Both the position numbers and the translations under genes were made by a program. Of a stretch of 64,000 nucleotides of DNA, positions 79 to 49,300 are shown one piece after another. Source of the DNA: Chara braunii (taxonomy: Eukaryota; Plantae; Charophyceae); NCBI GenBank assembly GCA_003427395.1, contig BFEA01000040.1:3039954-3103953 (forward strand), read 5' to 3'. Numbering within the stretch: position 1 is the first letter of the stretch; each line of letters opens with the position of its first letter. Below the pieces are notes generated by a model. It searched no databases, had not been told where the DNA came from, and was given only the letters and a program-made list of their open reading frames with translations.

Positions 79-252
79 CGTTTATGTGCGAAAATGGCAA
101 ATGAAGGTACATATGGTGAGGGAAAAGTATGCATACATTTGAAATCCTAATCTCCCAAAGATCTCTTATTTTCAATGTATTGATAAATGTTCAATTCTTT
201 TGTTGAACTCTTTTGTAATCGCATTTAACGCAGGGAATTAGGAAGACTGCCG

Positions 253-1035
253 ATGTCGATGAAATCAATTCCCACAGCGGAAGGAGATTTCTACATGTGG
301 TTTCCACCTCTTGGTCATCCTATTTTAGACGTGAGGATGCTTGTGGATGAAGAGCTGGGAAAATTGAGAGAGAACACCAAATCGGTGCCCACCAAATTAG
401 AGCTGGTAACACTTTTGGATCGGGTACGAACGCTGGCGGATGAGGGTCTGAAAAACATGAACAATTATTACCACTCACTCCGTGTATTGGAGAAAGAACG
501 AGAGCGGTTAGAGGACGATATATGTTATATTAATGATCAGATGAAACAACGAAAAATACGTCTGAAGCGCTGAAAAATTACGAGGTGGAAAGATACTTTA
601 GAGCGAGTAGGCGTGCTGAAGGCGTTGGAGGTTGGTCATCAAGGAACACATGGTGTGGCATGTGTCCCTCCGAATACAAACAAAAGGTCTCGTGAGGGCA
701 CAAGTGATTCCAAGTCACCTACTCGTGAGCCTTTGGAACCATGCATTGATGATTCGTTTTGCATTTTGCAAAACGTGTGGCCAAACAACGACGAGTACAC
801 ACAATAAGACTTATGTGACGAGGAGCTAGAAAGGAGGAGATACACGGGTTTGCTCATGTACTCGATTGACACGATCAAATATCTGAAGAGCGAGTTCAAA
901 CTCGATAGTTGTGGGACATCTGACAAACTGCCTCCAGAGTTTAATAAGCATAGACATAATCTGCTAGATAGGAGTGATGAATTGATTGAAGCTTTAGTTC
1001 TTCACGCTGCACAATACGACGAGAGAGAGAAGTGA
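253..1035 (+). pseudogene. Unknown coiled-coil-rich cargo protein (~260 aa) with two in-frame stops
   Basis: ORFs 253-573, 613-807 and 850-1035 share one frame. They are separated only by TGA (571) and TAA (805), each one C>T change from CGA/CAA. Confidence 0.6.
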
Positions 1036-1605
1036 TTGAGTAATGAGCATCGAATCCAAATACGTCTACGAAGGTCGTTGTCATGACAGTGTGCGACTCG
1101 AAGTGAGAGGTAGAACAGATATATTCTAAAGACGATAGAGAGTGCAATTATGAATATCGAATGTGGAGTATTTCCGTTTCTGGGCAGTATAGTGTGTTTA
1201 TTGTCGTGTGTTTTTGAATCAAAGGAAACATGTGAACAACAGAGCTATCTTAGAAGATGATAAAACATGTCATAATACAATTGTCAAAACGACACAGTCG
1301 TATTGATGTTGGGGTAGTTCGCACTGAGCGATGTCCTTGTTGTTTTACATGACAATGTGTCGCGTATCGTACGGGGACTTTAGGGTTATCCTAAACATTA
1401 CGCAAACTTTTATGGAGTCAACATGAAGAAAACAAACAAACTTCAAATTTGTTTTTTTGTTTGAAAAAATTGGTGTCTGTCGAAAGGCATGCGAATGTTG
1501 TAATCGATGTGCGCTCATGTGTTGTAGACGTATGCTTTAATTGTTATGAACTTTTCTTTTTCTACTACGCAAGTTTCATTTTTTTCGTTGCTTGATACGA
1601 TCATC

Positions 1606-3045
1606 ATGTCGAGTGACTCCAGTTCGCAGCATCACGATGTTAGCAAATGGTGGGAAACTAGTGCTTGTCCGTCGTGTGCGCCTATTCACACAGGCATAGT
1701 GCAATTTCGTCCACCGACTTACATAAAACATGTTGTGAATTGGGAGCACGACTTGCTGCAACCAGGAGTGAGGGACGAAGAATTTTGTTTTGCTATGCGG
1801 AGTTGTGATGAGGGTTGGGTGTCGCTTGGGACAATTCCAGAAACCGTGTATATCATGTTTACGTCTTGCATTGTCCTTGACCGCGTCATTCGGGTTAGGA
1901 ATTATGACTTTTGCTGGCCATCTTCACGAGTCCTTGCTTGCGAAGGGGTTGTTGAGGTTAAATGATTTCTTTTACGATAATGTGGAATGCGGGTTGAATT
2001 GGTGCACGTCAAATGTGGATGTAGAAATAAAACATGAGAAGGATGAGAGAAGAAATCCAAGATACAGATGGGTTCCTTTTCAATTGCCTATTGTTATTTC
2101 GAAGATTGTTCTGAACGTGTTAGATCTTGTGGGAAACTATTGGGAGGCAACGTATAGCAAGGGAGAATTGTTGTCTCGCAAATTGTTAAGGTTAATGTAC
2201 GATTGACCTATTTTCCGCAATCCGCGTCTTTTGCATGTGATGGGTCTTATTCATTTGCCACCCAGGATTGCAGTGTGGTTGATGTTTGCGGATCCTGGGA
2301 GCGATATTCGAATTTGTTGGAGTGTGCGTGGGATCCTCTCAGTCGTTCACAGGGAGCATCATCTTGTTGCGACGTGTCCAAAACAATTATACAGAGTGAC
2401 AGGTTCCTGGAAGTGAACAACAATTGGGGATACTTTGTGAATTGGGTGGAAGGGAAGCTGCATCCAGCGTAATATAATGGGAAATGGACGATGGCAGCAC
2501 GCGGGGATAATGATTTTTGGGTTCCGTTGGGCTGTGTCCCGGAAGGATTGATGAGTCATCTCCATTACGTCGTTATCCTTTTGAAAGTATGCTTCGCAAA
2601 TGCCGGGGTGGGCGATACAACAGTCATAGAGGAGCATGCTAGGTGTTGCTTTGAGAAGATTGCTGTTAGTGAACGACAAATATTCACTGCTGCGTATGAC
2701 AAGATCTTTGATGATAATTTCTGGGTGCTACAATCGACAGTCATGATACGCTCCGAGGGACAATCTTTTTATGAACATCTTCCTGACCCTATAAGATCTT
2801 CAGCGCTTTTAGGGTGGGTACCTCTACAGTGTCCACTGAAATTTCCCGAGTCGGACCGATTGGAAATGATTTTCTTTGATCCACTTGGTGTCCCTTTCAC
2901 TTTGACTTACACCAATGGACTGCTAACATTCATCCAACCACACGGAATGACACACTTGACCGACATGACATCCCTCATAACATCTTTGGGGATAGATTCA
3001 CAAGCGAAGCAATTCATTGCTTAAGAGGTCAAACTGTCTTCCGAA
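1606..3045 (+). pseudogene. Unknown repeat-module protein, probably the N-terminal part of the H3-fold fusion gene
   Basis: ORF pieces 1546-1965, 1790-2206, 2203-2472 and 2491-3024 carry recurring modules: WVSLGTIPE/WVPLGCVPE and WVPFQLP..DLVGNYWEATYSKGELL/WVPLQCP..DPLGVPFTLTYTNGLL. The span 2203-3555 is one frame broken only by TAA 2470 and TAA 3022. Confidence 0.55.
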
Positions 3046-3555
3046 ATGCGGGGAAAAAAAAGGTTAGCTTCCAAACCGAAGACCATCGATTCTCAACAGT
3101 CTGGGAAGGCTGTGTCGATGCCTGGTGCAAAGAAAGCAAGTGTGAAACCAAAGAAGAGGATGCCTCCAGGCAAAGCAGCGCTGCAAGAAATTCAAAGATT
3201 GCAGAAAACCGAGAAGCTTCAGATTCCGAAGACAGCGTTTTATCGTTTTGTACATGAGCTTACACAGAAGAGAGATGAGACTGCTTGCATGCAGCTTATT
3301 GCACTCCAAGCTCTTCACGAGTTTTCAAAGCAGTGGCTGACAAGATTATTGGAAGATGTTATTTTGGTAGCATCCTGTGCTGGACGTGTGACAATCCTTC
3401 CGAAGGATCTTCACACTGTCATTCTGATACGAAATGATGATGTTAGCGATAGGTGGAAGAATAGAGCAATGAACAATGTAGCGCCACCTCCTTCGACAAG
3501 GTATGAAAAAGTCGCGGCAGAGACAAAAATGAGAAAAAAACAAAAAGAGAAATAG
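3046..3555 (+). CDS. Divergent histone H3-like (histone-fold) protein
   Basis: KPKKRMPPGKAALQEIQRLQKTEKLQIPKTAFYRFVHELTQ...LQALHEFSKQWLTRLLEDVILVASCAGRVTILPKDL aligns without gaps to H3 [41 protein letters not shown]...[36 protein letters not shown]. It has a non-canonical basic N-tail and a ~40-aa C-terminal extension. Confidence 0.9.
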   Translation: MRGKKRLASKPKTIDSQQSGKAVSMPGAKKASVKPKKRMPPGKAALQEIQRLQKTEKLQIPKTAFYRFVHELTQKRDETACMQLIALQALHEFSKQWLTRLLEDVILVASCAGRVTILPKDLHTVILIRNDDVSDRWKNRAMNNVAPPPSTRYEKVAAETKMRKKQKEK

Positions 3556-3942
3556 ATGTTGGAGCTGAAGTTAGTTGGGCATGATTTTGATGGGAGCAGC
3601 ACCACTTTCAGGACAACAGCCGTAGAGCAGCGCTGGAGGAGTGGAGGAGCAGGCTAGAATGAAAGGGTTGGCATAGGCCATGCCCACAAGGGAGAGAAAG
3701 ACCTACCTAGGTGTCATAGGTGGGATTTCATACCAGTCCGTAGTCCGACCTTCAACAGCGATCTGCATCGACAGTCTATTGCCATCGCTGATCAGTATTT
3801 ATTACACCGTCAGCAGGACGCAGAAAAAAAGAGGAGAGTTATTGTTTTTTTTCCCTCATGACCACGACTCTTCTCTGTTCGTCCATAGCCATTCATTTCG
3901 GCTAAAAACATATTGTCCTCATGCTTAATTTTTCTTCTTCCT

Positions 3943-4015
<73 letters not shown>

Positions 4016-4196
4016 CACATGAGGTGANNNNNNNNNNNNNNNNNNNNNNNNNNNNNNNNNNNNNNNNNNNNNNNNNNNNNNNNNNNNNNNNNNNNNNNNN
4101 NNNNNNNNNNNNNNNNNNNNNNNNNNNNNNNNNNNNNNNNNNNNNNNNNNNNNNNNNNNNNNNNNNNNNNNNNNNNNNNNNNNNNNNNNNNNNNNN

Positions 4197-4280
<84 letters not shown>

Positions 4281-4421
4281 CTTGCGGTATGGAATCACAC
4301 ATGAGGTGATGAGGGGGGCTGTGTTGTTTTCATGTATGCTGACGACGATCAAACACGTGTCGAATTTCATGTAAGTCCGTGTATGATTGTACATGTATCG
4401 GAGAGAATACGAATGAATGAT

Positions 4422-4480
4422 GTGAAGGTGGTCATGCTCCCTGCCGGTACGAGACCGCAAAAATGTCAACAACATTTTTA

Positions 4481-4529
<49 letters not shown>

Positions 4530-4549
4530 GTGCGCGCACACACACACAG

Positions 4550-4583
<34 letters not shown>

Positions 4584-4701
4584 ACACACACACACAAACA
4601 TCGCAATGAGTTAGGTTGTCGTAAAGGTGGTCATGCTACAATGACATTCGCCACCGCAAAAGTGCATGGAGCATGACCACCTTTACGACATCTCTCTCTC
4701 T

Positions 4702-4750
<49 letters not shown>

Positions 4751-4863
4751 ACACATATTGGGAGGAGGACTAGACGTCGTTAAGGTGCTCATGCTCCAAG
4801 CACATTCGCCACCGCAACAATGTTTGGAGCATGACCACATTTACGACATCTCTCTCTCTCTCA

Positions 4864-4910
<47 letters not shown>

Positions 4911-5029
4911 AGACACACACACACATACACACACATATTGGGAGGAGGAATAGACGTCGTAAAGGTGGTCATGTTCCAAGCACTTTCGTCACCACAACAA
5001 TGTTAGGAGCATGACCACCTTTACGACAC

Positions 5030-5072
<43 letters not shown>

Positions 5073-5227
5073 CTGTGCATGTGCGTCATTGGCGAAGGAA
5101 TAAACGTCGGAAAGGCACAGACACATACACACATAGGGAGGAGAAATGATGTTGTAAAGGTATTCATGCTCCAATCACATTCGCCACCGCAAGAGTGTTG
5201 GGAGCATGACCACCTTTACGACACGTT

Positions 5228-5275
<48 letters not shown>

Positions 5276-5295
5276 ACTGTCTCTCACACACACGA

Positions 5296-5361
<66 letters not shown>

Positions 5362-5904
5362 ACGCGCACACATACACGAATACACACACACAAACACACA
5401 CACACACACACATAGACACACATACACACACATATTGGGAGGAGGAATAAACGTCGTAAAGGTGGTCATGCTCCAAGCACATTCGCCACCGCAACAATGT
5501 TAGGAGCATGACCACCTTTACGACATCTNNNNNNNNNNNNNNNNNNNNNNNNNNNNNNNNNNNNNNNNNNNNNNNNNNNNNNNNNNNNNNNNNNNNNNNN
5601 NNNNNNNNNNNNNNNNNNNNNNNNNNNNNNNNNNNNNNNNNNNNNNNNNNNNNNNNNNNNNNNNNNNNNNNNNNNNNNNNNNNNNNNNNNNNNNNNNNNN
5701 NNNNNNNNNNNNNNNNNNNNNNNNNNNNNNNNNNNNNNNNNNNNNNNNNNNNNNNNNNNNNNNNNNNNNNNNNNNNNNNNNNNNNNNNNNNNNNNNNNNN
5801 NNNNNNNNNNNNNNNNNNNNNNNNNNNNNNNNNNNNNNNNNNNNNNNNNNNNNNNNNNNNNNNNNNNNNNNNNNNNNNNNNNNNNNNNNNNNNNNNNNNN
5901 NNNN

Positions 5905-5939
<35 letters not shown>

Positions 5940-5994
5940 CTGTGCATGTGCGTCATTGGCGAAGGAACGAACGTCGGAAAGGCGGTCATGCTCC
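4422..5994. repeat. Array of 72-bp hairpin units interleaved with (CT)n(CA)n microsatellites
   Basis: Units at 4618-4689, 4776-4847, 4956-5027, 5151-5222 and 5453-5524. Consensus is GTCGTAAAGGTGGTCATGCTCC-N28-GGAGCATGACCACCTTTACGAC (22-bp inverted arms). Half-units occur at ~4422 and ~5972, and there is an N gap at 5529-5904. Confidence 0.92.
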
Positions 5995-6145
5995 CTTCTC
6001 AAATGGCGAGCACAAAGTTTGGAGAGGATGACATTGGTCTGTGGATTGTATTAAAAAAAAATTACTCATGCCATTATATATCGTTCAATAAGTTTTCTTA
6101 CAAGTTTTTTTGCACAATCGTTATGACGACATGCATGAATGACAG

Positions 6146-7550
6146 ATGGAGATGAGTCATGAACAATGCCCACGCGCAATGGAGATGGTCCTCAAGTATG
6201 CAAAGGAAGACATTGACTACACAACTGAAACAGAGTTCGACGAATTGCGAAATTGCATACCATCATATTTCGATGTGCGCATTGATCGCGACATGACATT
6301 GGCACAGCATGCTCATGACATCTCTCAAGCGCTTGTTTTTTTGGCACAGCATAGTCGATAGGTTGTACGAGCAGGTCGAAATAGGCAAGTCGAAATCACG
6401 GACGTCGGGAGTGTATGATAAACGCACTTGGAAGGGGGATATGAAAAGGAAAGCGTTAGCTCATGGATATTTTATACTTGGTCGTCGTGATGTTATGAGA
6501 CCCGGATTAGAAAATTTGCTTGGTCTTGTACACTTGCGATGTGTTGTAGAGAAAGAGGACGTGCAATCTGTGTGCGAGTTGCCACGTGTGATTGCAAATG
6601 GTGGTGAGTACGTGATGCTGTCGCAGTGGACGAATTTGTGTCCATCATCCAGTCGTGCCCACATGTCTTTTAGTTATTTGGCTAGTATTGTTGAGATATT
6701 AGAAGGAGCCGAAGAGTTGTTGGAATACAATGCGATTGAATTTTCAGAGTCACAGTCCATAGCGGACAAGGCTATTGTGAAGTCCTTGGAGGCTCTTGCA
6801 AACACTNNATCGAATGAAGTACCACAAATTGTAAGAGAGTGTTGGGATGTTATGGNTGCANAATGCAGCGCAAGGGATGAAACATTGAAGTTGACATCCA
6901 ACGAAGGACCAGGCAACACGGTCGTGGTAAACAGCGGAAGGACAACCCCTCTAACATGTATGGATTTTGCTTTGGATTACAAATATCAAGGTCCAAAGGC
7001 AATGGGATTTGGTGAAAGTGAGGATGAGGGAGAGAGTTGTGATGATGAAATGGACGACGATGATGATAACGACAGCCTGTGAAAATTTTGGGATAATCAC
7101 GCGGACGGTTCATGTGATCCGCAAAAAGGATGGTGTCTCGCTGTTCTCCGTCTCGCGTTGACATTTGAAGAATGTCCTTCAACAATTTTGATTTGTTGTA
7201 CGGACATCACAATAGACGGACACTTACAGTATGATTTTTTGTCGAGATTTTCTTATTTGCATCCAAAAGGGAAATATATTTCGAAAGGTGGAAAAAATTG
7301 GTAAGTGTTAGTCAGTTGAGAATTGGCGATAGCCGCATCAAAGAGTTTCGACGGCGTGGCAGATTTTCTCACAAAGGTAGGGATAAATCTTTGTCATGGT
7401 CAAAAAGAGAGAACGGAGAGTGATGACATCGTCTTGTGGAGGCAGATTATGAATCATGTGGTGAGGGAAGGTTTGGCGGACCAGGAAAAAGAGAGCGGCG
7501 GACCTGTGAAGGGTAAGAGAAAGGCAAGTAGTGCTTGCGAGGAGGATTGA
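6146..7550 (+). pseudogene. Unknown cargo protein with acidic patch (frameshifted)
   Basis: ORFs 6146-6361 and 6309-7082 overlap at a T7 run (~6336-6342), suggesting a frameshift. An acidic tract reads ESEDEGESCDDEMDDDDDND. A further piece lies at 7323-7550. No family recognised. Confidence 0.5.
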
Positions 7551-7617
7551 AGCGACCATTCTTCCGTTGAAAGTTTTTCATTTTTAAGCAGGGTTGTGTT
7601 TCGTATATAATCCAATC

Positions 7618-7759
7618 TATGAACGACATATTTATGGTTTTTCAATTTGGAAATAGAAGTATTTTCATGCAAATCCAAAAACATTTTTTATGAACGACTT
7701 GTTTATGGTTTTTCAATTTGGAAATAGAAGTATTTTCATGCAAATCCAAAAACATTTTT
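7618..7759. repeat. ~71-bp direct tandem duplication upstream of the transposase
   Basis: ATGAACGAC..TTTATGGTTTTTCAATTTGGAAATAGAAGTATTTTCATGCAAATCCAAAA.CATTTTT occurs twice in tandem. Confidence 0.9.
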
Positions 7760-7948
7760 CATGAATGCATTGCTTAAAAAATATTGTGAATGCGTCCTCT
7801 TTTCTTAGTTGTGAAGAATAAATGATCGTCGTTCATGAATAAAGTAAACAATTAATATGTGACGGTCAATTTCATGTTTGTTGCATCAATGATGCAGTTG
7901 TATTACAGGAAGATAACCGTGACGTATTCTTGACCATATGATACGCAA

Positions 7949-10528
7949 ATGTCGAGGCACAGCAGGAATGTTGTCCCATGCTATGATTGCGGCCGCATAT
8001 TCAGTCGTACGAGCTTAATGGAGTCGCACAGTTCGAAGGGGTGCTTAGCTGAGATACAACGTACTGGAACTACTAGTGATGCTAACGACATGAGTTCAGA
8101 GAACGAACAAAATGATAATGCCGTGAATATGGACATGCACGAGAATGTCGAACCAATCATTGATGATATTGCAGAAGAGGCAAACAACATAGACGAAAAT
8201 GAATATTCATCGGATTATCGACTCACTGCAGTGATATGTTCTATGAGAGGAGGGTTGGGATTGTCAGATGCAGATGTGAATGCCTTGCTCTCCGTTATAT
8301 GTCACCCTTCTTTCGATGCAAGCCGGCTACCATATAGAAATTCTCGTACTTTGAAGGGTTGGTTACGTGGAAAGCATGCAGACAAATCTTGGGAGCACAT
8401 TGATATGAGGACAGATGATTGGCCGGCAGAAGCGAAGGCTGGACTTTGGGTGAGAAAATGGGATGTAGCATTTGAGACTGTGATTCGAGACGCACTGATG
8501 AACGACACTAACTATACGCTAGAGGCAGACTCAACATGTCATGAAGAAAACATGGTGTTCACGAATGCGAAATCGGCACAGTTTTGGAAACAAGCACAAG
8601 ACATAGTTCGAAATGACAAAGGATTAGATCGAAATGGACGCGTAAGATATGTTCTGCCATTTATTTTGTATTCCGACAAAACGAATATAGATGGTCGCAT
8701 GAAAACAAGCATGTATCCTCTGATGTTGTCACTCGCTGATAAGCCAGTACGAGCAACTTTGCTCGCATACTTGCCAATTCTTCAGACTTTGCCGTACACA
8801 CGAGGTTGGACCCATAGTTCATCTGCATTTATTCGCCGCAAAAGGTGTGTATTCCATGAGAGTCTGACTATTGTATTGAAGGATGCAAAAAAGGCCTCTC
8901 ATGACGGTATGAAACTTAACCTCCCGCGATACGGGAAAGTTACAGTACATCCGTTGCTGTTGAACTATGTGCAAGATCATCCAGAGAGATGTCTTCTGAC
9001 ACTTGTAAAGAACGGCAGATGTCCAAATTGCATTGTACTGAGCGAGAACTTACACGAACATATGGACTGCAACACGATTGTACGGACTGAAAATGTGGAT
9101 CGCGATATATTGCATGGTGTACATGATGGTTCTGATCCTGACGCTCGTGCAGCAGCGATGAAGAGAGCGCTGGACTGGGGGATGCATACTGACGATGTAA
9201 TGAATGGTTTGTGGGGTTTTTATCAAGGTCGTTGCGGTGACATTCTGATGTTAGATTACTATTATGCACTGCAAACAGACCGAATGCACACAGTAGATCA
9301 CGATATTTTTGAATACATTGTTGAAGCCTTAAAGAATATATGCAAATCATTTCAAACACCGTTGGAATGCTTGGAGAACTGGATGCTCGTTTAAAGTGCG
9401 TAAGCAATCGAGGGAATGTCACGTTTCAAAAGCTTATATTGCCGGTAACAACGGGGGTAGACTGTTTTACACGAGAGGGACGATTTAAAGCTAAGCAAAA
9501 TCGTGCCGTGATGACTGTCTTGTTGTCCATTGTGCACAACTTCCTGGACAATATAGAGGGACATGACTTTGTGAAGTGGTGTGACATGTTTCTCGAATAC
9601 TACATAAGCATGTTTCGAGTTGTTAAACACACGAAGCATTCCTTAGATAGATGTGACGCTTTGCTCGAAGACTTTATGACTTATACAAATATGCGTTTCA
9701 GACATCTGCAGAAGTAAAATTGGAATATAGTAAAAATGCATGATTTGAATAAATTCAGAGGACTGTAGAACGATCAGGGCCCCCGAACACTTTTGCAGCA
9801 GACATTTGAGAACACAATCACATTCGTTTTTGCAAAGATCCTTATAAAACATCAAATCGAAGAGATCCTTTAAAGCAAATGGTGGACCACGTTGTACGAG
9901 CAGATATTTTAGAAGAACACGTATCCGTTGTGAGAAGGAAGAGAAATAGAGAGGAAGAAAATTGGTCAACGGTCTTGGAGGCAGAGAGAACATGTCGTAT
10001 GAAGTTCACGATCACACTGTCATACGTCCCCGACCACATGTCGCACTTGCTTGCATACACGATGACTTTATTCAAAGAGCAGATGCACGAATCGTTAGAG
10101 CGACAAACTCGTTTCATGGTCGTGAGGTACGGAGTGATGTGAGTGTAAGGGGTCTCGATAACGACATTTGGTACGCTTGTGTGACAATATTTTTTGTGCT
10201 TCAAACCACAAAACGAGGATAAATGTTCAAGACGGAATGTGCATTTGTTCAATGGTACAAAGACTGCACGAGGAACTTCACAAATCGAACGTCATGTAAA
10301 TTGATAGAATGGGAGAGGAACAGAGGCGTGCAAATGAGTAGCATCATCGATATAGACACAATAATTCAACCAGAACATCTTGTACCACACTTCAAGCGAG
10401 CGGCGTTTAGTCATGATATAGACCGAGCAACGATAGAAAAAATGTTTTTTTTTCGTCAACTGGTTCACAATTATTATATAAGACTGTCTCCAAGTCTTCT
10501 TCTGCTGCCTTATACGTTTTTATTATAA
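7949..10528 (+). pseudogene. Plavaka-type (CACTA/EnSpm-related) DDE transposase with N-terminal C2H2/C2HC zinc finger; frameshifted
   Basis: Motifs in order: CYDCGRIFSRTSLMESHSSKGC finger; PFILYSDKT..YPLMLSL (first Asp); LLAYLP; FHESLTIVL; HPLLLNYVQDHPERCL..CPNC (second Asp); TDRMH (D/CxxH); KMHDL; C-terminal VRATNSFHG..SDVSV, AFVQWY and IIDIDTIIQPEHLVPHF. Breaks near 9340-9394, 9715, ~9770-9960 and 10220. Confidence 0.85.
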
Positions 10529-10566
10529 AATGCATCCTATTCTGCAGGTGTAACTATTGTACGATA

Positions 10567-13268
10567 ATGACGTCGTTGCCTGAACGAGGTACAAATAGCG
10601 AAAGAAATGAGGAGGGAGCAGAAATATTTCTACACAAGACACCACGCCGAAGGATAAGGGTAACCAGTGAACCGAAAACTGGAGATGGTGCAAGTGAACC
10701 GCAAACATGCAAAAGTAATGAGAACAATCCGGGAGAAAATAAAGGAGTTGCACGCTCGGGAACGTGGAAAGGCAAAGGAGGCAGAACGGCTCGCAAGCAC
10801 ACGACCTCCAATCGCGGTCAAGTATTGGAAAAACAAGGAATATCAAAAAACAAAGTTCAAGGCTGTGTAGAGAAAGCATCGACGTCGAGAACTCAGGAAT
10901 CGAAACGTGTCAGGAATTTCACGGCAGCCAAGAAGATGGTACCGAAGTTCAATAAGACATTGACGGACGAGACAATACAAAGGATGTACCACAGACCTTT
11001 GCTGTCATTATCAGTAACTGCCAGGAATCTCATACCGTTGCCTATTGCTACCATTTCTCATTCACCAAGAAAATACAATCGAGGGATGTTAGAGAGTGAC
11101 AGTGAGAAAGAGACATTGCGAGATATGCGGCATGAAAAAAGATTAGCAACACACGATAAACAATTGGAGAGATTGAGAGAGAAAGTGAAAGGGACAGAAG
11201 AAAGAGAGGGATGGGCGACGGGGAAAGAAGTTATTGAAGAGGTCAATGTAGGAGAAGATGTCATGAAGTCTGTATTCTCACACAACTGCAAGAACACAAA
11301 TCAAAAGAATACAAACGACGGATGAGTGTCTGTAACACGTGAAGACCTCACTAGCACAGAGAAGTTCATGCACACAGTCAGAAAAGATGCAACACAGAAT
11401 GATGAAGCAGTGTCGAGGTTAGCGTCATCTGCAGTTGACAAGATCGGAGGAGACTCTGAAGTGAGAGTCAGCACAACAAGTCAACATATGATAACAGAAG
11501 AGCAAAATAAGGCAAAGACGAACCTCGATAGAGTGGAAACAAATGAACAGCCGACGTTGCCGGCTTCGAATCTTCTGGGAGGCTCGACTGACATTGCTGT
11601 AGATGACAAGTCAACAATTGCAAATATGGAGATATTGTCAGAACACGAAGGAAAGACATCAGGGGGAAGTAACCCAGAGAGGCCGCAAGAGTGTGAAGGT
11701 CATATGATAGCAGAAGAGCGAAATGAGGCAAAGACGAACCTCAATGGAGTGGAAACAAATGAACAGCCGATGTTGATGGTGGAATGTGAACTGCGAACGA
11801 GAATTGAAGTCGACCATGGAGAGACAAATTGTGTAAGACTTGCTCTACAACCGGCTTCGAATCTTCCGGGAGGCTCGACTGACGTTGCTGTGGAGGACAA
11901 GACAACAGTTGAGAAGATGGAGATATTGCCAGAACACGAAGGAAAGACATTAGGGGGAAGTAACCCAGAGAGGCCGCAAGAGTTTGAAGATCATATGATA
12001 ACAGAAGAGCGAAATGAGGCAAAGACGAACCTCGATGGAGTGAAAACAAAGGAACAACCGACGTTGATGGTGGAATGTGAACTGCGTACGAGAATTGAAG
12101 TCGACCATGGTGAGACAGATTGTGCAAGACTTGCTGTACAACCGGCTTCGAATCTTCTGGGAGGCTCGGATGATATTGCTATGGAGGACAAGACAACAGT
12201 TGAGAAGATGAAGATATTGCCAGAACACGAAGGAAAGACATCGGGGGGAAGTAACCCAGAGAGGCCGCAAGAGAAGGATGAAGGAACCGGAGTTGTAGTG
12301 TATTTGGATGTAGATACAGAGGAGGGCGAGGAAACACAATCTATGGAGCAGAAGGTGGTGGCAGCAACTATTGATATAGTTCATGAATTTTTTCCATTCA
12401 CATGGAACCCCCTGAACAATGAATCATTCACATTAAGAGTACAAGATCTCCAATGTCTGGGAGCGGGCAAGTGGTTGACGACAAATATCGTTGACTTTTA
12501 CTACCATTACGTATATGACTCACTCACACGTAAGGCTGTTGACCTCTCACACGTTAAACTGTTGCCTGCTCTATAGTACAACGGAATCCAGGGGCTCACA
12601 AGGACGCGAGTTTGGGCAGCCCTCCTGATCTGGAGACGGTAACACGAAGTTCAAAGTCGAAGGCGAAAAGCATGAGGAGTTTGTGGAAAAATCAAGTAGT
12701 TATTGTTCCTCTGCTAAGCAATCACCATTTTACTATTCTCGTGCTGAACAACATAGGACGCATGCTACAACATCCACATCTCGACCAATCAAGAGGCTGC
12801 GCCATTTTCCACCTAAACTCAAAGAAACGATTGGGCAATCCTCCGTTTCAACCTTTGTTAGCCTATTTCTTTTACGAGCACATGGCATTACGGTATTCAG
12901 CTGATGTTGAAGTTATGACCTCGACCATTGAATCGATATGGAAAGCATTGATGCAAGGTGTATCTTTCATCGACGAGATTGATTGCCAGCAACAACGGAA
13001 CTCAAACGATTACGGTGTATTCGCCACGAGGAATGTTGAGAGCATTCTTATGTGCATCGCAAACGACGAAGACTTCGAGTTCACGAAAGACACAAGGACG
13101 AAGGCTTGCGAACGTTTGTCGTCAAGAAAGCCTTGTGAGCAACGATACATAATGATCAAGGCTTTGGCGGAGTCACACCCCGCGCTATGCGGAACACAGA
13201 CAACAAATGACAAGTACGTTATTTTCAAGAAGTTAGCATCAAGCAGGAGGAAGACATCGACAAAATGA
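10567..13268 (+). pseudogene. Ulp1/SENP-like (peptidase C48) SUMO protease with long disordered repeat N-terminus
   Basis: LRVQDLQCLGAGKWLTTNIVDFYY; VIVPLLSNHHFTILVL (catalytic His); IFHLNS (Asp site, here Asn); CQQQRNSNDYGVF (QxNxxDCG, Cys here Tyr). In-frame TGA at 11323 and TAG at 12574, plus a frameshift at ~12600. Confidence 0.85.
11485..12273 (+). repeat. Coding tandem repeat, 3 copies (216, 291 and ~282 bp; 72/97-aa units)
   Basis: HMI(T/A)EE..AKTNL..PASNL.GGS.D.A..DK.T...MEIL.EHEGKT.GGSNPERPQE starts at 11485, 11701 and 11992. Confidence 0.95.
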
Positions 13269-13765
13269 TGAAGCACGCACTGGAAGAGGTGAGCTAAGAT
13301 ATGGACGTGCGGCGACTCGTAGATTTCGTTAGTTGAAACATAAAACAAGTACGCAAATGATGATAAAGACAAGATAAGGTAGGTGAAATTTTTAACATAA
13401 GTCCACAAATTTATCATTGCATATGTAATGTGAAAATACGTGTTTTTTGTTCACGAAAAGCAGGGTCGAGATAAAGCCCCACTGCTGAGATGAAATTTCA
13501 CTAATGACAATTTTTTCATGTCCTATGTTACGTGTCTTCTTCCTCTTCACAGAATCGGTGAGCGATATAGACGAAGTACTTGCCACCAATGGACAACCAC
13601 ACATTACGACCTCGTCGAGGGCCTGATGTTAAAGGGACATCGACGCAACGAAGGCTCTGCGTTCGCGAAGAAGGGTTGTCATGAAAGCAGACGAATGTCG
13701 GTGCACGTCTCGTACAGGAACGAAACAAAGTTCGAGATATAACACGACATAGAACATCTGAAGAA

Positions 13766-15345
13766 GTGAAGAGTGTACGAACAAGAACGGAGCGTTGGAG
13801 GACAAATTTGGTCGAAATGCACCGCGAAGCGAGCAAACGAAAATTGCAGATGGAAAAAACAGAGAAGCGAGATAACGACATTGACATCCGACGCAGGGAA
13901 GAGTCTTCAAAGTGTACTCCGAAGTCGAAGACAGTACACAGGAAAACGCTGGTCGGAGCAACCCCTCTTGCTCCAAGTAAGTACGTCATGGAAAAGAAAC
14001 GGGAGCACAACAAGGGTGAAGCGACTGTTGTGGACAGTGCAGAAGTAGGAGGAAGCGGTGAGGATATCGAAGGCAGCATGCGTTGTGGTCGGCAGGCTGG
14101 CGAGAGCAGTGGAGGTAAACATATTGGAGGTCGCGACATTCAGCACAAGCAATGGCATGTGGAACGAGAATGTCGACAACCATCATTGACAGAGTGCGAA
14201 GACGAGCAGCTGGAGCAAAAAGAAGCAAATACGGAAGAGGACGAGAACAACAGAGACAACGACAATTTTGGTGAACGTGAATCGAATGAAGACGAGGATG
14301 ATGATAATGAAGACGGTCGTGAAGAGGATGACGAGAACGACGCACACTTCACAAACGAGAAAGCAATAGGTAAAACATTGTGTGAAATCCTGTAAAGTTG
14401 TTTGTGGCATTAAAAAAATGTGGAAGAAAAAGACAACAACATTGAAAACAATTCTCTTGTTTGCATTCTCGCTTATGATTTGCACGTGCTTAATGAACAT
14501 ATAAAAGTAACCAGCATAATAATTGTGTTTTCCGTTTTTTTGTTTTGTTCTGTCTCTGTGTGCTCGTCCTCTTTGTTTGTGCAGTTATGCGAGGACGCGA
14601 AAAACGGGATGCGTCGGAGAAAAACAACCTGAACAACCGCATTAGTGACAACATCCACACGTTATACGCGCACTCCAAAATAGTGAAGCAATTGATGCGT
14701 TGCGTAGCGAAGGACTTTTGTTTATCCCGAGCCAAGGATGCAGAGATGTATCCGTCAGTCGACACGTATCTCGAATCCTTCAGGGGTCTCACCGAATCTC
14801 TGGACCCGGACACACGATTCATCGTAGATCAGTCGATGAAGAGCACAACACCGACAACACTTCGCACACTCGGATCAAGGGAGCTGACGAACATCAGAGG
14901 AGAGATCGCTTACGACATTGTNCGGGCTTTTTGGAGCGCCGNGGGGCTNCCTTATCCATGCGGAACTGTAAGAGATCGTTTTGAAAAGGAGCGAGAGGAG
15001 ATGAGGACGAAAATGCTCGAACAATCATCGTGGAGAGTGAAAGGCGAAGAGCCGTCGAGCGCAACAGAGTTTAAGAATGTCATGCGAGACGTTTTATACA
15101 GAGATTGNAATGAAGCAGGTCGAAATGGTTGCACTCTCCAACAACTCGCATTCGCTCATATGGTGTTAGAGTGTCACATCAGCAACAAAAGTCGACCCGC
15201 ACGCACGGCAGCAGCGAGCAAGGAAATGCGAAGAATAGAAGAAGCCATCGTGTCAACTTGCGAGACCTGTATCAGAAAAGTGACTATAAATGTGATCTCT
15301 CTCGATCGTGATAAGACCGTAGTGCAGAGTTCAAGGAATATATGA
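13766..15345 (+). pseudogene. Spliced unknown cargo gene (acidic exon plus globular exon), possibly the 3' part of the Ulp1 gene
   Basis: A GT-AG intron at 14370-14584 (ATAG|gtaaaa...tttgtgcag|TTATG) joins ORF 13766-14395 to ORF 14545-15345 in frame (EKAI-V-MRGREK). A further candidate intron lies at ~13379-13552. Confidence 0.6.
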
Positions 15346-16371: not shown

Positions 16372-17076
16372 TTGGGCACCAGTTTCGCCCGCATGAAAAC
16401 GAGGGAGTGGAAGTGGGAGGACGTGTGGGCGAGGTTGCAGTCGATGGGCGTGACGAGGGATGCAGTCGACTGCGGGAAGAAATGGGACAACGTGATGCAG
16501 CAATTCAAGAAGATCCACAAGTTTCAGAACCTCTCCGGCGGGAAAGACTACTTCAAGCTCGCATCGAAGGCTAGGCGATCGGAGGGCTTCAGCTTCGTCA
16601 TGGACCGGAGCGTGTACGACGAAATTGAGGCCATGACGAAGGGGGATCACACGATCCACCCGAAAAATTTGGCGGACACTGGGGCGGCCGGTGGGGTTCA
16701 GATGCCGGCAGGCGCGGGTGCTGCAGGGGACACCGTGGCCACTGAGGGTGGAGGGGAGGCAGCCGACGAGGAGCAGGGGTCGACGAAAGACTCCACATTC
16801 AGCGCGGGGAGCGGCGGCGGTTATGGGAAGAGGAAGAACATGCGGCAACAAACCTTTGAGAGCGTCGCCGAGGTCATGGACAAGCATGATGCGCTTATGG
16901 CGAGCACAATGGACAACGCGAGCAAGCAGCAATGCTCGATGATGTTACGTAAGTGCGAAATCCTAGAGAGCGAAGTGGAAGTGTAAAGGAAACATTATGC
17001 TGCGGCGGATGAGGCGAACAGAATGATGTGCGACGCCCGTATGGAGATAGCAAAAGCCATCCGCGAGAGATCATGA
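16372..17076 (+). pseudogene. Trihelix / Myb-SANT-like DNA-binding protein, 5'-truncated with premature stop
   Basis: MKTREWKWEDVWARLQSMGVTRDAVDCGKKWDNVMQQFKKI matches the W..V...L...G..R....C..KW.N trihelix signature. Reading through TAA 16984 gives RKHYAAADEANRMMCDARMEIAKAIRERS* ending at 17076. Confidence 0.85.
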
Positions 17077-17156
17077 GTGATACTGCCAATTATGTCCACC
17101 GTTGCTTTAGTGGCCTGACTCTCCACTCGTTGCGCCTGCAGAGATGGCGACCTGTG

Positions 17157-17159
17157 TTT

Positions 17160-17218
<59 letters not shown>

Positions 17219-17281
17219 CGTGCGTGCGTGTGTGTGTGTGTGTGTGTATGTGTGTGTGCGTGTGTGTGCGTGTGTGTGTGT
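17157..17281. repeat. (TG)n/(TGCG)n microsatellite
   Basis: Direct inspection. Confidence 0.95.
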
Positions 17282-17934
17282 CGTCGCCAAATGCTCAGCA
17301 ATACCTTTTTTAGAATCTTTTTTTTTTTATAGTTGGTGTGCTGCATTCGCGGTCTCCACAGCGAGAGGTCCAAGTTGTTGAAGGGGTTATGTAGTTCTAG
17401 GATTGCGGTGGACGGGGGTTCCACCGTTCGTGTCCAAGAAATTGCGCGTCGGGGGGGTGGGGAGGGGTTGGGGGGGGTTGGGGTGTTTTAGGGGGGCGGG
17501 GGGTGGGTGTGTGTTTTTTTTTTTTTTTTTTTTTTAAAGAAAGCCATATTGGCCCGTAGAGAGTGTATGGACGTGCTTCTGCAGAGGCGTGGAAAGGTCT
17601 GTATGCGCCTCAGGGAGCTGGGCATGGCAACAGTTGAAGGGAGTGTGCGCGAAGGAGGTCTGCAGAGTTGCTGTAATACGTGTCGCTGCCGACGACAACG
17701 GCAGGCGAGGAATCGTCGTCGGGGCCCGTCCGTCTGCTCCATGCTTTCGATGCGTCGGCGCCTCCTCCACCATACAGGTCTTCCGCTTGTGGCCTCTCCA
17801 GCATTGAAGGTCGGCGCACACGGTGCACAGCGACGACATCCACGCGGGACACCCTCTGCCTTTTCTCCTCGTCGTCGCACCTCACAGCCACTACGAAGTC
17901 GCCGTTTTCTTTGCAGTCGTCAACATCTCGGATG

Positions 17935-18204
17935 TCTTCAATGTCGTCGTCGATCATCGTTGTGGATCTTGTCGCTCTCCTTCTCGCCGCGGATCCTTCT
18001 CGCCGTGGATCTGAATCGCCCCGTCGGAGGTCCGGCATCCTTTAGTCGCGAAGATCTTCTTCTCGCCGCGGAGCAGTGTCTGCAGGGTTCATCTCCTTCT
18101 CGTCTGGGACTTCTTCAGTGTCATTGTCGATCATCGCTGTGGATCTTCTCGCTCTCCTTCTCGACGCGGATCCTTCTCGCCACGGATCCTTCTCGCCGCG
18201 GATC
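17935..18204. repeat. ~177-bp imperfect duplication with TTCTCGCCGCGGATC sub-repeats
   Basis: CTTCA.TGTC.T.GTCGATCATCG.TGTGGATCTT.TCGCTCTCCTTCTCG.CGCGGATCCTTCTCGCC at ~17936 and ~18113. Confidence 0.8.
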
Positions 18205-20148
18205 GGTGTCGCCCCTTCGGAGGTCAGACGTCGCTTAGTCACAAAGAGTTTCTTCTCGCCGCGGAGAAGTGTCCGCACAGTTAATCTCCTTCTCGCGTTC
18301 GCGTCGACGTGGGGGTTGTGTGTGTGGCGAGGGCGAGGACGCATTGCTCCCCAGGGCGGCAAAGGCGCTTGTTCGTCGTCAATGCGAACACAGGCGTAGC
18401 GACAGACGACCATTGACGGAGGCGGTGTCGGCGCGAATACCCTTATAAGGGTATCCGCCCTGGTTTTTTACAAGTGGCAGAAAATAGGTTTGGTTTGAAA
18501 TTTGAGTACAATGCATGAGTTGCGGTTGTGTTTTTGTTCACGTTGAATGAATGGTTGACTATAAGCAAAGTGTGTGTGGGCGTGCAGTTTTGAGGCGCGC
18601 GTGATGATTTTTATTCTTGATGCTATAGAGTTGGCGTTTCCGTCGGCAAAATGTTTGGCTTTGATTAAAACTAGGAAGAGGTTTTCTTTTATTGAACCGA
18701 CCACAGTACATCTGCGTTCATACGGCGGGCGTCATTGGAAGTGGTGTTGCTTTGGGCAGTAATTGGGGTGTGCGAGAGAAAGTAGAACGCAAGCGGTGAC
18801 CTCCGCGCGGTAGATGCGGGAGGTTGACAGTCGAGGACGGAGCCAGGCCCTATGAGCCGCGGACGCCATAGGTTGACAGTCGTGAGTTTGGTGCGTAGGC
18901 GAAGGAATGGCCTTGACGTATTTTGATAGGCCCGCGCGCTGTGTGGCAACAGTTTATATTGAATTTTGCAGTGGTTCATCTCAGCCTTGGGTACTCGCAC
19001 TATTGGTAACGACATTGGACTTTCAACGCGATGGTACAAGGATTGAAGGCAGTGAACGGCGGCGATGGAACATCGCAGCGGCTGAAGATGCCGAGGGGTT
19101 GAGGGCCCGGCGGGGCTATCCCCCTTGGTTTTGTTGCCGGCCCATCCGTAGGCCCGGTTGGAGGAACTGAGAGTAGTATTGACAGTCTCTCTTCCCCAAA
19201 GCACCGGTTCCCGATGCTTATGTTTTTATTTTTACTCTTAATTTTTTTATTTTTTTTTTAATTATCAGTCTTGTTTCTGGGACGTGGCACCAACATCGGT
19301 ACTAAGGTTGTTTGCAGGGTATCGCCCAGCGTGGGCTGAAGGGGCCAGCGGTTGCAATCTCCGCGAAGTGGCCGTCACCACAGTCGACGACCTTGACCAC
19401 ACGCCTCTTTCGGCGGACCCATTTGGGTTCCGGCGTGTTCTGAATGCTGGCAAAATTCCTTTATCCTACCCATGTTGAAGCACAGGCCAAGGAGTCAGCA
19501 GCTATGCCAACCAATGAGTGTGTAGCCAACGAGGCAGAAGAAACCGAGTGGCGGGAACCTCCTGCGGGTCCACCATCCGCCAACCATGATCTGCTGCAGG
19601 GGAGCTGTCCGCCACTCGCGATCTGCAGTGAGAGGTTCGTAGAGTTCTTACCTAACTTGTGGATGGACCAGCAATGACCAATTCACCATTGATGCAGACA
19701 CCCAGGGCTTTGTCCCACTTGAAAAGGTACACTGGTATGACCTGAACCACGCACAACACCTTGAATCGGTCGGTCCCAAAATCAGCATATTTTGCAGATT
19801 TTTGGGGCCGCAGTGTGATCAGTCCCATTGGGACCCGAAGAAAGGAGAGTTGTGCTCTGGGCACAGCAGGTAAGGGTGGTGGCTGCAGCAGCACTGACTG
19901 TGTCCAGTTGCGCATTTGGAACCCTTCTCTAGTTCAGTCTTCAAAGCCCTCACTTGAAGGGTTGTTACCACCCCCAAGATCTGCACAAGGAACAGCTAGC
20001 CGAGCATGACCGGTACACCCCCGAGCTGCTGATATACGGGTTCAAGCTCGAACCAGGAAGCTTTTGAGTGGGGAAGGTGAAAACCACTCAGGTTTGCTTA
20101 GGCCCAGTCGGCTCACTGGAGGTGTCCTAGTGCCATTTTCCTGCCTGT

Positions 20149-20164
20149 GTCCTTCGGGACGTCC

Positions 20165-20198
<34 letters not shown>

Positions 20199-20235
20199 GG
20201 CCCCTGCACAAGAAATGACATGCATAAATTGAGAA
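20149..20235 (+). pseudogene. U6: U6 snRNA-derived copy, 3'-truncated
   Basis: GTCCTTCGGGAC..AAAATTGGAACGATACAGAGAAGATTAGCATGGCCCCTGCACAAG..TGACATGCATAAATTGAGAA matches plant U6, including the ACAGAGA box and AGC triad. It shows CpG>TpG/CpA changes and lacks the 3' end with its oligo-U. Confidence 0.92.
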
Positions 20236-20304
20236 GAGTTGGCACGTCCCCTCACTTTCTCTTTATTTTTCCTACGAGGTTTGCGGTCCGACCAACCGCA
20301 GTTA

Positions 20305-23310: not shown

Positions 23311-25310
23311 AACAAGCACCCACCTTCAAGAGATGGTGGTGAGGGACGAATCAAAAGTCGAGCTACTGGAGTCAAGCCGGGTGTTGCCACGGGCTAAAGA
23401 TGGGAGCGTATCTTCCAATCGACTAAGGGAAGATTCTTTCTCGATTTGCACATTTTTGAAGCGTGTTGTGCTGACGTCACAACCACTTTTTCTATTGGGG
23501 CCACTCCTGTTGTCCGCGGCTGGCGTCACCATTCCAGCCGGCCTTCACCACTCTCACCTGCAGCTGACCGTTGTCATTTCCCGCTAGGATCGTGTGAACG
23601 TCGCAGAGGAGGTTGGCCAAGTGCATTAAGGAGAAGGAGATGTATGGCGCAGGGTGACTTGATTCGTGGAAATGTCTCTGCTATAGGAGGAGCATGTAGG
23701 CAATAGGGAAGGAAACAGAGAGAGGAGAAGGGAGGATACTGATGTGTGGGAGCGATGGCCTACAAGGTCGACATCTTCATGCACTCCGATTGATGCTGCG
23801 GACGTCAGTAGGATGCTGTCAATTTGTAGGTCGCCAGTAGCTGGTAATAGTAGTAGAAGTCTGGTCTCTGGATACATATGTTTGTGTTAGCAAGGGTGTG
23901 CTCTTACTGACAGTCGGATTTAGCGTCTTGGTTCTCTTGTGGGGCAATGTCTGCATTCTACTTTCTGGACAACGTTCGATTTGCTGACTTTCAATGAGAA
24001 ATTGCATTCTGAATTTTTGCCATTTTGCTATGGTTCGTTCTCCCTGAGAAGGAAGGGAAGATAGAGGAGGCTTACCTACACGTGAACGGTGGGAGGCAGG
24101 AACGCCGTACCGTGCTAGGAGCTGCTGGGTTTCGGCAGCAGCAAGGAGTGTAGCCGCTCCGAGGTACTGCTGAGTCGAGTTTGGAGACTCGAATGCTGAC
24201 CGGTTTCCGGAGTTGGAGTGGCTGCTGGCTTATCCAATCCGGTGCTGACCTGGGCTCAGACTGTTGGGTAATTCCACTGCTGGGACCGAGGTTGCAATGA
24301 TTCAGCGGATCCGTGTTGTCGCTGTTGAGAGCGTTGTAGTGGCTGTTGTCGAGATCACTACTGTTGCAGCTATGCGAATTGCTACCATTTGCGCCGCGGT
24401 TGTTGTTATCGAGGCACCAAGATTGTTGCTGGGCTTTGACAAACTGCTGTCAGACTTAGCTAGGAGAAGCTAATGTTGCCGTTGTGGGGTCTCAAGTTTT
24501 GTTGTTGTTGTTGCTGCTGAGTTCACGGTGCCGAATTGTTGCACAGTACTACGCTTCGCCGGTGTTTGAATGGGGCACGAAGGGATGTGTACTCCATTTG
24601 AACGTTGCCCGGTAAGCTGCGTAGCGGGGTCTTGGTCAGGGGATGGAGAGGTGTGACTTGGGGAAGTGATCCAATTGGCAAAGGGAGTCTTTGTTGCGCG
24701 CTTGAAGGGTGCAATGCAAAGAGGTTATTTCTGCGGCTTGGAGTTTAGTCAGACAACCATTTCTCGGCATCTTGATCAGTTTTGACCATCTCCACTGCAT
24801 TATTGGCCACCATTGCGGGGCCCTTAGGAGCTGAAGATAACAAAACCCTCTCCATGCAAGTATGAGTGAACCTTTTCCTAAATCCTGAGCGACTAAATAT
24901 CTCTCCTTCTACCTTTCTCACTCTCAGTCTAGTCTGTTTTGGATCGGAGGGGAAGGCGGCAAGCGGGATTGAAACCCGTAATCCGCCCCAAGGCCTCTGT
25001 GGGAGGTTCGCCCCACCGATTGCGGGAGCTTTGCCGGAGCCCAGGCGGGGTTCTGGAGGCAGGGAACTTCAGATATAACTCTTGTTTGACGCGTGTGATC
25101 CCTTCCCCTAACTGTTATCCCCTGGGTATCTGAATACAACTACGTAAGGATATTGCTTTTTGTTTTGTTATGTATGTCAGGACATGTTTTTGGAAAGGTA
25201 AATCAACAAGTATATATGAGAGTTCAAATACTTTGAGCAAATTCAGACAAAATAAACTGGGGGAAGGTGAGATGAAGGCGTTTTGTTTGGTTTGACTAGA
25301 TCAACCCAAG

Positions 25311-47782: not shown

Positions 47783-48168
47783 ACGGGTTTGGTGATTCTA
47801 ACTTCACCAACCCTGACACTAGGTTCCATGATAAGCTCTGGGGGTAGATCACCATGAAATGACATCATGTTAGCCAGGAAATGAACCATTTCATTGGAAG
47901 AGTACTCCACTAATCCAGAGGGATTCTAAAAAGTAGGGTTCCCTCCCAATGGAGACTCACTTGTTGATGCCTCACTAGGCTCACACTCTGTCAATGTTAA
48001 GGACTGCAGAGACAACTCAATCATGGTATGAGGGTCATCTGTTCTTTATATCAGTTCACTAGGCAAATCTCCAGTAAAGAGATGAACATTCACATTGGTC
48101 TTTCTCTTCTTTTTAATCTTCATCTTTTCATCATGCTTAAGAGCAAGAAGCCTCATACCTCCCAGATG

Positions 48169-49284: not shown

Positions 49285-49300
49285 TTTTCTTCTCTGCCCT

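What the first reader, a model, noticed from the sequence alone, without database searches (positions are those of the whole stretch)
253..15345. Candidate giant Plavaka/CACTA transposon carrying a chromatin toolkit: histone H3 fold, Ulp1 SUMO protease, unknown genes and a hairpin array
Seen: a Plavaka-type transposase sits among at least five co-oriented genes across >15 kb, including an H3-fold gene ~4.4 kb upstream and a C48 protease gene immediately downstream. All decay by the same mutation type. Established: Ulp1-like domains are known passengers of CACTA, Mutator and Zisupton elements, SUMO participates in TE silencing, and some TEs encode anti-silencing factors. Inference: this is one mobile unit that supplies its own nucleosome component and a deSUMOylase to shape its chromatin or target site. 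I do not know of such a combination in streptophytes.
Basis: partly seen in the sequence, partly recalled or inferred. Interest (0 to 1): 0.92.

Follow-up and report, generated by a model that had tools for sequence, protein, structure and literature searches.

The report
Algal transposon carrying a histone-fold gene
This is a broken copy of a large cut-and-paste transposon of the alga Chara whose family has kept a histone-H3-like domain and a SUMO-type protease under selection for a long time, which suggests, but does not show, that the transposon uses them to manage its own chromatin.

Summary
Confirmed as a dead copy of a giant multigene Plavaka DNA transposon, probably in Chara braunii. 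The window's gene order (repeated unknown module, H3 fold, two unknown genes, Plavaka transposase, Ulp1/C48 protease, last gene) recurs, in full or part, at ten other C. braunii loci. Sister subfamilies have about 16-bp TIRs (CAACAG...CTGTTG), and two of three copies with both ends show a 2-bp target duplication. Between subfamilies the H3 fold (dN/dS 0.13-0.30), protease and unknown genes are under purifying selection, the H3 fold about as strongly as the transposase. Corrections: the H3 fold is not a free histone but the C-terminal domain of a fusion with two copies of an unknown module, without a canonical tail. The window's transposase and protease are broken by stops, frameshifts and lost catalytic residues. 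Its ends were not found, and no RNA read covered its H3. The 72-bp palindromes look like DNA-binding sites, not RNA. Precedents: red-algal giant Plavakas with chromatin genes, Ulp1 in VANDAL/KAONASHI, H3 captured by fungal hATs. I found no report of this combination. The chromatin function is inferred only. First readers noted similar elements on other pieces of this genome.

The parts
253..1035 (+). Gene A, unknown; broken by stops at 571 and 805. Homology to the first gene of sister subfamilies not shown.
   Evidence: no match; multicopy in DNA contigs and a few RNA reads from relatives at under 95% identity
1606..2185 (+). Module 1 of an unknown repeated domain (about 170 aa), N-terminal part of the module-module-H3 fusion; frameshift at about 1910
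   Evidence: tblastn to L008 module 1, E 4e-20; alignment A1
2186..3024 (+). Linker and module 2 of the same domain; stop at 2470; in frame with the H3 part, separated from it only by a stop at 3022
   Evidence: stop-free module 2 + H3 frames in L005 10933-12336 and L006 9761-11239
3046..3555 (+). Histone H3 fold (about 3090-3435) plus basic C-tail; no canonical N-tail; 39% identical to a near-canonical H3 and 33-35% to the H3 folds of sister subfamilies; His113 position is Cys
4028..4196 (.). Assembly gap; the same GA-microsatellite unit and unique tail on both sides
4422..5994 (.). Array of 72-74-bp palindromes (23-bp outer arms) spaced by CT/CA microsatellites; includes gap 5529-5904, which has array sequence on both sides
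   Evidence: no Rfam match
6123..7550 (+). Genes D0 and D, unknown, with an acidic stretch; broken
   Evidence: homologs at the same position in L001, L003, L005, L006
7949..10480 (+). Plavaka DDE transposase (929 aa in the intact L005 copy); catalytic and C(2)C / H(3)H motifs recognisable; broken by frameshifts, stops at 9715, 9807 and 10220, and a deletion
10567..12330 (+). Low-complexity coding region upstream of the protease domain, with a 291-bp tandem repeat (11560-12273); probably the N-terminal part of the protease gene
   Evidence: in frame with the first protease piece
12331..13268 (+). Ulp1/C48 protease domain, dead here: stop at 12574, frameshift at about 12620, catalytic His kept, Asp and Cys positions changed; triad intact in L005 and L008
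13766..14395 (+). Acidic, low-complexity ORF at the position of a similar acidic ORF in sister copies; homology not shown
14587..15345 (+). Last gene K; 25-33% identical to the last gene of sister copies, whose protein resembles basidiomycete DUF6532-like proteins (lead only)

Best explanation
The region is a decayed, non-mobile copy of a deep-branching subfamily of a giant (about 15-23 kb) Plavaka cut-and-paste transposon of Chara. Shown: the family moves as one unit between short TIRs and makes a 2-bp target duplication, and its accessory genes were kept by selection while the subfamilies diverged. Inferred mechanism: the accessory genes are a self-directed chromatin kit of the VANDAL/VANC or red-algal PAG type. 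An element-encoded DNA-binding protein (candidates: the repeated module or gene K) recognises the subfamily-specific 72-bp palindromes placed between the element's genes. The fused, tail-less H3 fold pairs with host H4 and either forms nucleosomes without the K9/K27 tail on the element or sequesters H4 and chaperones. The Ulp1 domain removes SUMO from silencing factors there. The net effect would be transcription or transposase access despite host silencing.
For: Synteny at ten C. braunii loci; H3 next to element genes in L001, L002 (part), L003, L005, L006, L008 and in gene models P0015 and P0157. Shared 5' ends in six loci and inverted 3' ends in seven. TSD TC in L004 and GT in L012. dN/dS for L005 vs L001: H3 fold 0.17 (CI 0.08-0.31), transposase 0.22, module 0.37, D0 0.40, D 0.32; protease 0.31-0.41 within older subfamilies; K 0.25. 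His113 and Asp123 of the H3-H3 interface are kept in sister H3 folds; protease triad intact in L005 and L008. A different palindrome of the same length sits at most intergenic and subterminal positions of L005. Analogous systems: PMC5735166, PMC13317346, bioRxiv 10.1101/2025.02.11.637652. Confidence in the transposon identity alone is about 0.95; the value given is for identity plus the anti-silencing or chromatin mechanism.
Against: No functional data. No RNA read on the H3 part in two poly(A) libraries read at 6-12% depth. C>T at CpG is enriched 1.4-1.6 fold in Plavaka copies against 1.1 in the LTR duplication of the window, so there is no sign of escape from methylation. The module has no recognisable fold. 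The window's own H3 is very divergent and could not be included in the dN/dS analysis. The window's own ends and TSD were not found. L005 has both ends but no matching TSD.
Confidence: 0.5

Rival explanations
1. Same transposon, but the H3-fold fusion serves transposition itself. It tethers the transpososome to nucleosomes or centromeric chromatin for target-site choice, or acts as an architectural DNA-bending partner (TnpA-like) at the palindromes, and the protease regulates the transposase.
For: The palindrome also occurs in both subterminal regions of L005 (2161; 23881-24130), as TnpA sites do in CACTA elements (own knowledge). Sister H3 folds share a 3-residue loop-1 insertion and lack Gln68, features that recall CENH3 (CENH3 features from own knowledge). 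No hypomethylation signature.
Against: Palindromes are also placed beside internal genes. Phe84 and Thr107, typical of ordinary H3, are kept in sister copies, and the window's H3 lacks the loop-1 insertion. No insertion-site data.
Confidence: 0.3
2. The H3 fold is a captured host fragment with no histone-like role: either a passive passenger, as in the fungal hAT elements, or reused only as a dimerisation domain.
For: H3 capture by hAT transposons is known in fungi (PMC3538342, PMC6710886). The window's H3 sits on a very long branch and has changed His113. L004 lacks the H3 block yet has intact ends and a TSD, so the block is not needed in cis.
Against: dN/dS of 0.12-0.30 for the fold across subfamilies whose synonymous sites differ by 0.6 to more than 2 substitutions per site excludes a passive passenger. 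A pure dimerisation role is not excluded.
Confidence: 0.17
3. The window is a chance or mis-scaffolded juxtaposition across the N gaps, not one element.
For: No read spans the gaps; the window's ends were not found; gene A has no shown homolog in sister copies.
Against: The order of six gene blocks on both sides of the gaps matches independent loci, and both gaps have the same repeat on each side.
Confidence: 0.03

Closest known systems
Giant Plavaka elements of red algae (Bostrychia moritziana; bioRxiv 10.1101/2025.02.11.637652)
   Same: Plavaka transposase, 17-19 kb, several accessory genes with chromatin-related domains, tandem arrays of inverted repeats inside the element
   Different: Cargo there is PAG1-3 (adenine methylase plus SET; ParB-like plus 2OG oxygenase). 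Here it is an H3-fold fusion, a C48 protease and four or five unknown genes.
Fungal PlavakaA and PlavakaB (PMC12730594)
   Same: DDE core with C(2)C and H(3-4)H motifs, CA..TG-type ends as in PlavakaB, 2-bp TSD
   Different: Ends are CAACAG..CTGTTG rather than TGT..ACA or CATCA..TGATG; no TET/JBP gene found
VANDAL / KAONASHI Mutator-like elements of Arabidopsis (PMC5735166, PMC13317346)
   Same: Conserved captured Ulp1 domain; subfamily-specific motifs in non-coding tandem repeats
   Different: Other superfamily; no histone fold; VANC function is shown experimentally, nothing is shown here; motifs here are 72-bp palindromes, not 8-9-bp words
hAT elements carrying histone H3 in Pyrenophora and Pseudocercospora (PMC3538342, PMC6710886)
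   Same: A DNA transposon amplifying an H3-like gene between its TIRs
   Different: There a stand-alone H3 gene, in near-identical copies or inactivated by RIP. Here the fold is fused behind two unknown modules and is under purifying selection across deeply diverged subfamilies.

Membership tests
Plavaka (CMC/CMCT clade) | Plavaka transposase domain | tested here: met
   PF18759 E 1.7e-28, above the curated cut-off
Plavaka (CMC/CMCT clade) | [quoted passage not shown] | tested here: met
   Motifs found in L005, L003, L008 and in the window's pieces; assignment of the catalytic residues by motif, not by structure
Plavaka (CMC/CMCT clade) | Short TIRs with CA..TG ends | tested here: met
   Met in sister subfamilies. 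In the window's own copy neither end was located.
Plavaka (CMC/CMCT clade) | 2-3-bp target-site duplication | tested here: met
   TC in L004, GT in L012; no match in L005, whose 3' end is eroded. About 1% by chance for two of three. Not testable for the window's copy.
PlavakaA or PlavakaB subgroups | Ends TGT..ACA (A) or CATCA..TGATG (B) | tested here: not met
   Ends are CAACAG..CTGTTG
CACTA/EnSpm proper | CACTA/CACTG ends, 3-bp TSD, TnpD-family domains | tested here: not met
   Ends and 2-bp TSD differ; only the Plavaka Pfam family matches the intact L005 transposase
Canonical histone H3 / H3.3 | Stand-alone protein of about 136 aa with a conserved N-terminal tail | tested here: not met
   Fusion protein; no tail motif; 39-51% identity in the fold
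CENH3 | Longer loop 1, and changes at Gln68, Phe84 and Thr107 (features from own knowledge) | tested here: inconclusive
   Sister copies: loop 1 longer by 3 and Gln68 changed, but Phe84 and Thr107 kept. Window: loop 1 of normal length, all three changed. No CENH3 sequence was on hand for a tree; the H3 tree is unresolved.
Ulp1/SENP protease (C48) | PF02902 domain with His-Asp-Cys triad | tested here: met
   Met in L005 (E 8e-15) and L008 (E 1e-17); the window's copy is a pseudogene with two triad residues changed
Ulp1/SENP protease (C48) | Cleaves SUMO rather than NEDD8/RUB or ubiquitin | not testable with these tools
   Needs an enzyme assay
VANC-type anti-silencing system | Element protein binds element motifs and causes sequence-specific hypomethylation | not testable with these tools
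   Only indirect: mutation spectrum shows no CpG escape
Structured RNA array | Compensatory base changes or an Rfam match | tested here: not met
   89% of cells paired but no change on both sides among six units, so little power; no Rfam hit

The most novel reading that the evidence does not exclude
Chara Plavaka elements encode a sequence-targeted histone variant: a DNA-binding module fused to a tail-less H3 fold that is laid into nucleosomes at the element's own palindromes, so the element builds chromatin that cannot carry H3K9/K27 silencing marks, helped by its own deSUMOylase. Protein and palindrome would change together between subfamilies.
Probability: 0.25. Interest if true: 0.9.

Novelty: new variant of a known kind. 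Interest (0 to 1): 0.64.

Why it matters
Transposons that encode chromatin readers, writers and erasers are known, and H3 genes have been captured by fungal transposons. A histone fold kept under selection as a standing accessory domain of a transposon family would add a further route of counter-silencing or target choice: supplying part of the nucleosome itself. Near-intact copies (L005: full transposase, protease triad, module-H3 frame) and a subfamily-specific palindrome make this directly testable. It also explains why several C. braunii gene models are annotated as histone-domain proteins: they are transposon chimeras and would inflate counts of histone variants.

Tried and rejected
The search for homologous proteins with the window's H3: nothing; this tool only sees proteins of similar length, so it says nothing about fusions. 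Exact look-up of ten window proteins: none on record, so the DNA upstream of base 1 could not be fetched. Metagenome scan with the transposase and viral scan with the H3 fold: no relatives. Single-sequence structure model useless, pLDDT 32; model from alignment A1 pLDDT 52, no fold match in PDB or the Atlas, best Z 4.4; no Pfam, PDB-sequence or Atlas-feature hit for the module. One search used a mis-registered structure string and is replaced. The L006 row and the L006 and L001 rows of the transposase tree were in a wrong frame; the transposase tree was redone. Low CpG depletion (O/E about 1 against 0.32 in the LTR element) was considered as a sign of methylation escape and rejected, because the neighbouring Harbinger-like region shows the same and the pairwise spectrum does not support it. 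An endogenous-virus reading was rejected: TIRs, TSD and a DDE transposase are present, and no viral hallmark gene was recognised. The Calypogeia Plavaka locus L010 shows only transposase similarity, no H3 or C48 hit within 10 kb. A possible 3' end at 16374, just before a 5'-truncated Harbinger-type Myb/SANT frame, does not match the family TIR and is unproven.
Full report
Source. The closest relatives of the window's transposase are Chara braunii gene models at 37-46% identity. The window shares unrelated repeats with C. braunii scaffolds at 68-84%. The window is therefore most likely C. braunii or a close relative (inference). The 2018 DNA runs that hold it share about half of its 31-letter words, so they appear to differ from it by about 2% and may be another strain or other copies.

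Observation. Pfam confirms a histone fold at 3046-3555 and a Plavaka transposase at 7949-9394; PDB matches make the first H3-like. The protease is real but dead. An HMM built from sister C48 ORFs finds two pieces separated by a stop and a frameshift; the catalytic His is kept and the Asp and Cys positions are changed. The transposase continues to about 10480 through frameshifts, stops and a deletion of about 58 codons when compared with the intact 929-aa ORF of L005. Five full 72-74-bp palindromes and a half unit lie at 4422-5525.

The gaps. Both lie in non-coding repeat DNA. Gap 4028-4196 has the same GA-repeat unit and unique tail on both sides; gap 5529-5904 has array sequence on both sides. 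I did not test them with reads. Continuity rests on the flanks and on the same gene order across the corresponding interval in L001, L003, L005 and L006.

One mobile unit. Ten C. braunii loci (L001-L009, L012) carry the same genes in the same order and strand where they are not hidden by gaps or deleted. Alignments between copies start and stop at shared points: CAACAGAAAAAATGTG at the 5' end of L001, L004, L005, L007, L009 and L012, and its reverse complement, with small variations, at the 3' end of L002-L006, L008 and L012. Three loci have both ends. L004 is flanked by TC on both sides and L012 by GT; L005 has an eroded 3' end and no match. L005 spans 23.0 kb, including about 7 kb of estimated gaps. 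L004 (14.4 kb) has lost the module-H3-D block. Fungal Plavakas have 2-3-bp TSDs and the C(2)C and H(3-4)H motifs (PMC12730594), which are present here. In the transposase tree the window is the sister of all other Chara copies (99/99 and 98/99), on a long branch. Its subfamily is multicopy: 217 and 259 contigs lay on 100-3930, mostly at 85-99% identity. Its TIR was not found: the 5' end lies upstream of base 1 and the 3' end somewhere after 15345.

The H3 fold is a domain of a fusion. In L005 (10933-12336) and L006 (9761-11239) one stop-free frame runs from an unknown module into the H3 fold. A second copy of the module (21-27% identical) lies upstream, and in the window module 2 and H3 are in frame with one stop between them. 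The product is module-module-H3 fold-basic tail, about 650-750 aa, with no canonical N-tail. Sister H3 folds keep His113 and Asp123 and have a 3-residue loop-1 insertion. The window's H3 lacks the insertion, has Cys at 113, and is no closer to sister folds (33-35%) than to a near-canonical H3 (39%). Position and a shared Arg-Trp motif after the fold suggest one capture, but the tree is unresolved, so two captures are not excluded. The module has no family or fold match.

Selection. Nei-Gojobori estimates with bootstrap. For the least saturated between-subfamily pair, L005-L001, dN/dS is 0.17 (0.08-0.31) for the H3 fold, 0.22 (0.18-0.28) for the transposase, 0.37 for module 2, 0.40 for D0 and 0.32 for D. 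Other H3 pairs give 0.12-0.30, with synonymous sites near saturation. The protease gives 0.31 (L002-L003) and 0.41 (L005-L009), and gene K 0.25. Very young pairs are uninformative. The cargo was therefore translated and useful to the active lineages. The window's H3 did not align at the threshold and is not part of this estimate.

Palindromes. The window's units are 89% self-complementary with no compensatory change and no Rfam match. The L005-type subfamilies use an unrelated sequence of the same overall length, placed near both ends and at most intergenic positions. This fits binding sites for an element protein that change between subfamilies, as VANC targets do (PMC5735166), and recalls the inverted-repeat arrays in red-algal Plavakas. 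That reading is inference.

Decay and expression. C>T/G>A dominates (27 of 40 listed differences for the window; 73 of 110 among L005-type copies) in all contexts, with a mild CpG excess. That excess is no lower than in the window's LTR duplication, so there is no sequence evidence for escape from methylation. Two poly(A) libraries, read at 6% and 12%, gave 8 and 23 reads, none at 95% identity or more and none on the H3 part. The family is at most weakly transcribed in those samples.

Mechanism. Most likely the accessory genes act on the element's own chromatin: a DNA-binding protein finds the palindromes, the tail-less H3 fold engages H4, and the protease removes SUMO from silencing factors (about 0.5). 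A role in target-site tethering or transpososome architecture is the main rival (0.3), and a mere dimerisation domain is not excluded (0.17). Only the anatomy, the mobility marks and the selection are shown.

Comparison. Plavaka in streptophytes is reported without cargo (PMC13519894). Giant Plavakas with other chromatin genes are known in red algae, Ulp1 cargo in Mutator-like elements (PMC13317346), and H3 capture by fungal hATs (PMC3538342, PMC6710886). Searches of the held literature found no Plavaka with H3, nor H3 together with Ulp1; Repbase and subscription papers were not searchable. Verdict: a new variant of a known kind, with one surprising and testable part, the conserved H3-fold fusion. 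First readers of this scan noted similar elements on other pieces of the genome; those notes are unchecked and are not counted as support.

Noticed in passing
window 16393-18400: Myb/SANT-like ORF (PF13837, E 3.5e-7, matching profile positions 32-74 of 89, so apparently 5'-truncated) and GC-rich sequence: probably a Harbinger-like element. The Plavaka copy may have inserted into it near 16374.
   Followed up: partly
window 20149-20250: Full-length U6 snRNA match (77 bits), gene or pseudogene inside repeat DNA
   Followed up: no
window 32272-44507 and 51374-64000: Direct duplication at 94-98% identity, about 19 kb apart, of very long LTR-like sequence around a minus-strand Gypsy gag-pol; CpG O/E 0.32 in 43000-50000
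   Followed up: partly
window 11560-12273 and 7618-7765: 291-bp coding tandem repeat (2.5 copies, 92%) upstream of the protease domain; 71-bp duplication upstream of the transposase
   Followed up: no
L004 3241-17590: Internally deleted copy: gene A abuts the transposase, the module-H3-D block is missing, both TIRs and the TSD are intact
   Followed up: partly
C. braunii gene models P0003, P0005, P0007, P0015, P0157: Annotated as histone-domain proteins, but they are chimeric models stitched across genes of this transposon
   Followed up: partly
L010 (Calypogeia fissa) and P0019 (Closterium): Plavaka transposases in a liverwort and a zygnematophyte; no H3 or C48 hit within 10 kb in L010
   Followed up: partly
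L011 7274-7840: Near-canonical H3 with an extended N-terminus, 4 kb from a Gypsy pol on a metagenome contig; used only as the canonical reference
   Followed up: no
L009 22052: A further TIR-like start with subterminal repeats downstream of the main element; possibly another family member
   Followed up: no
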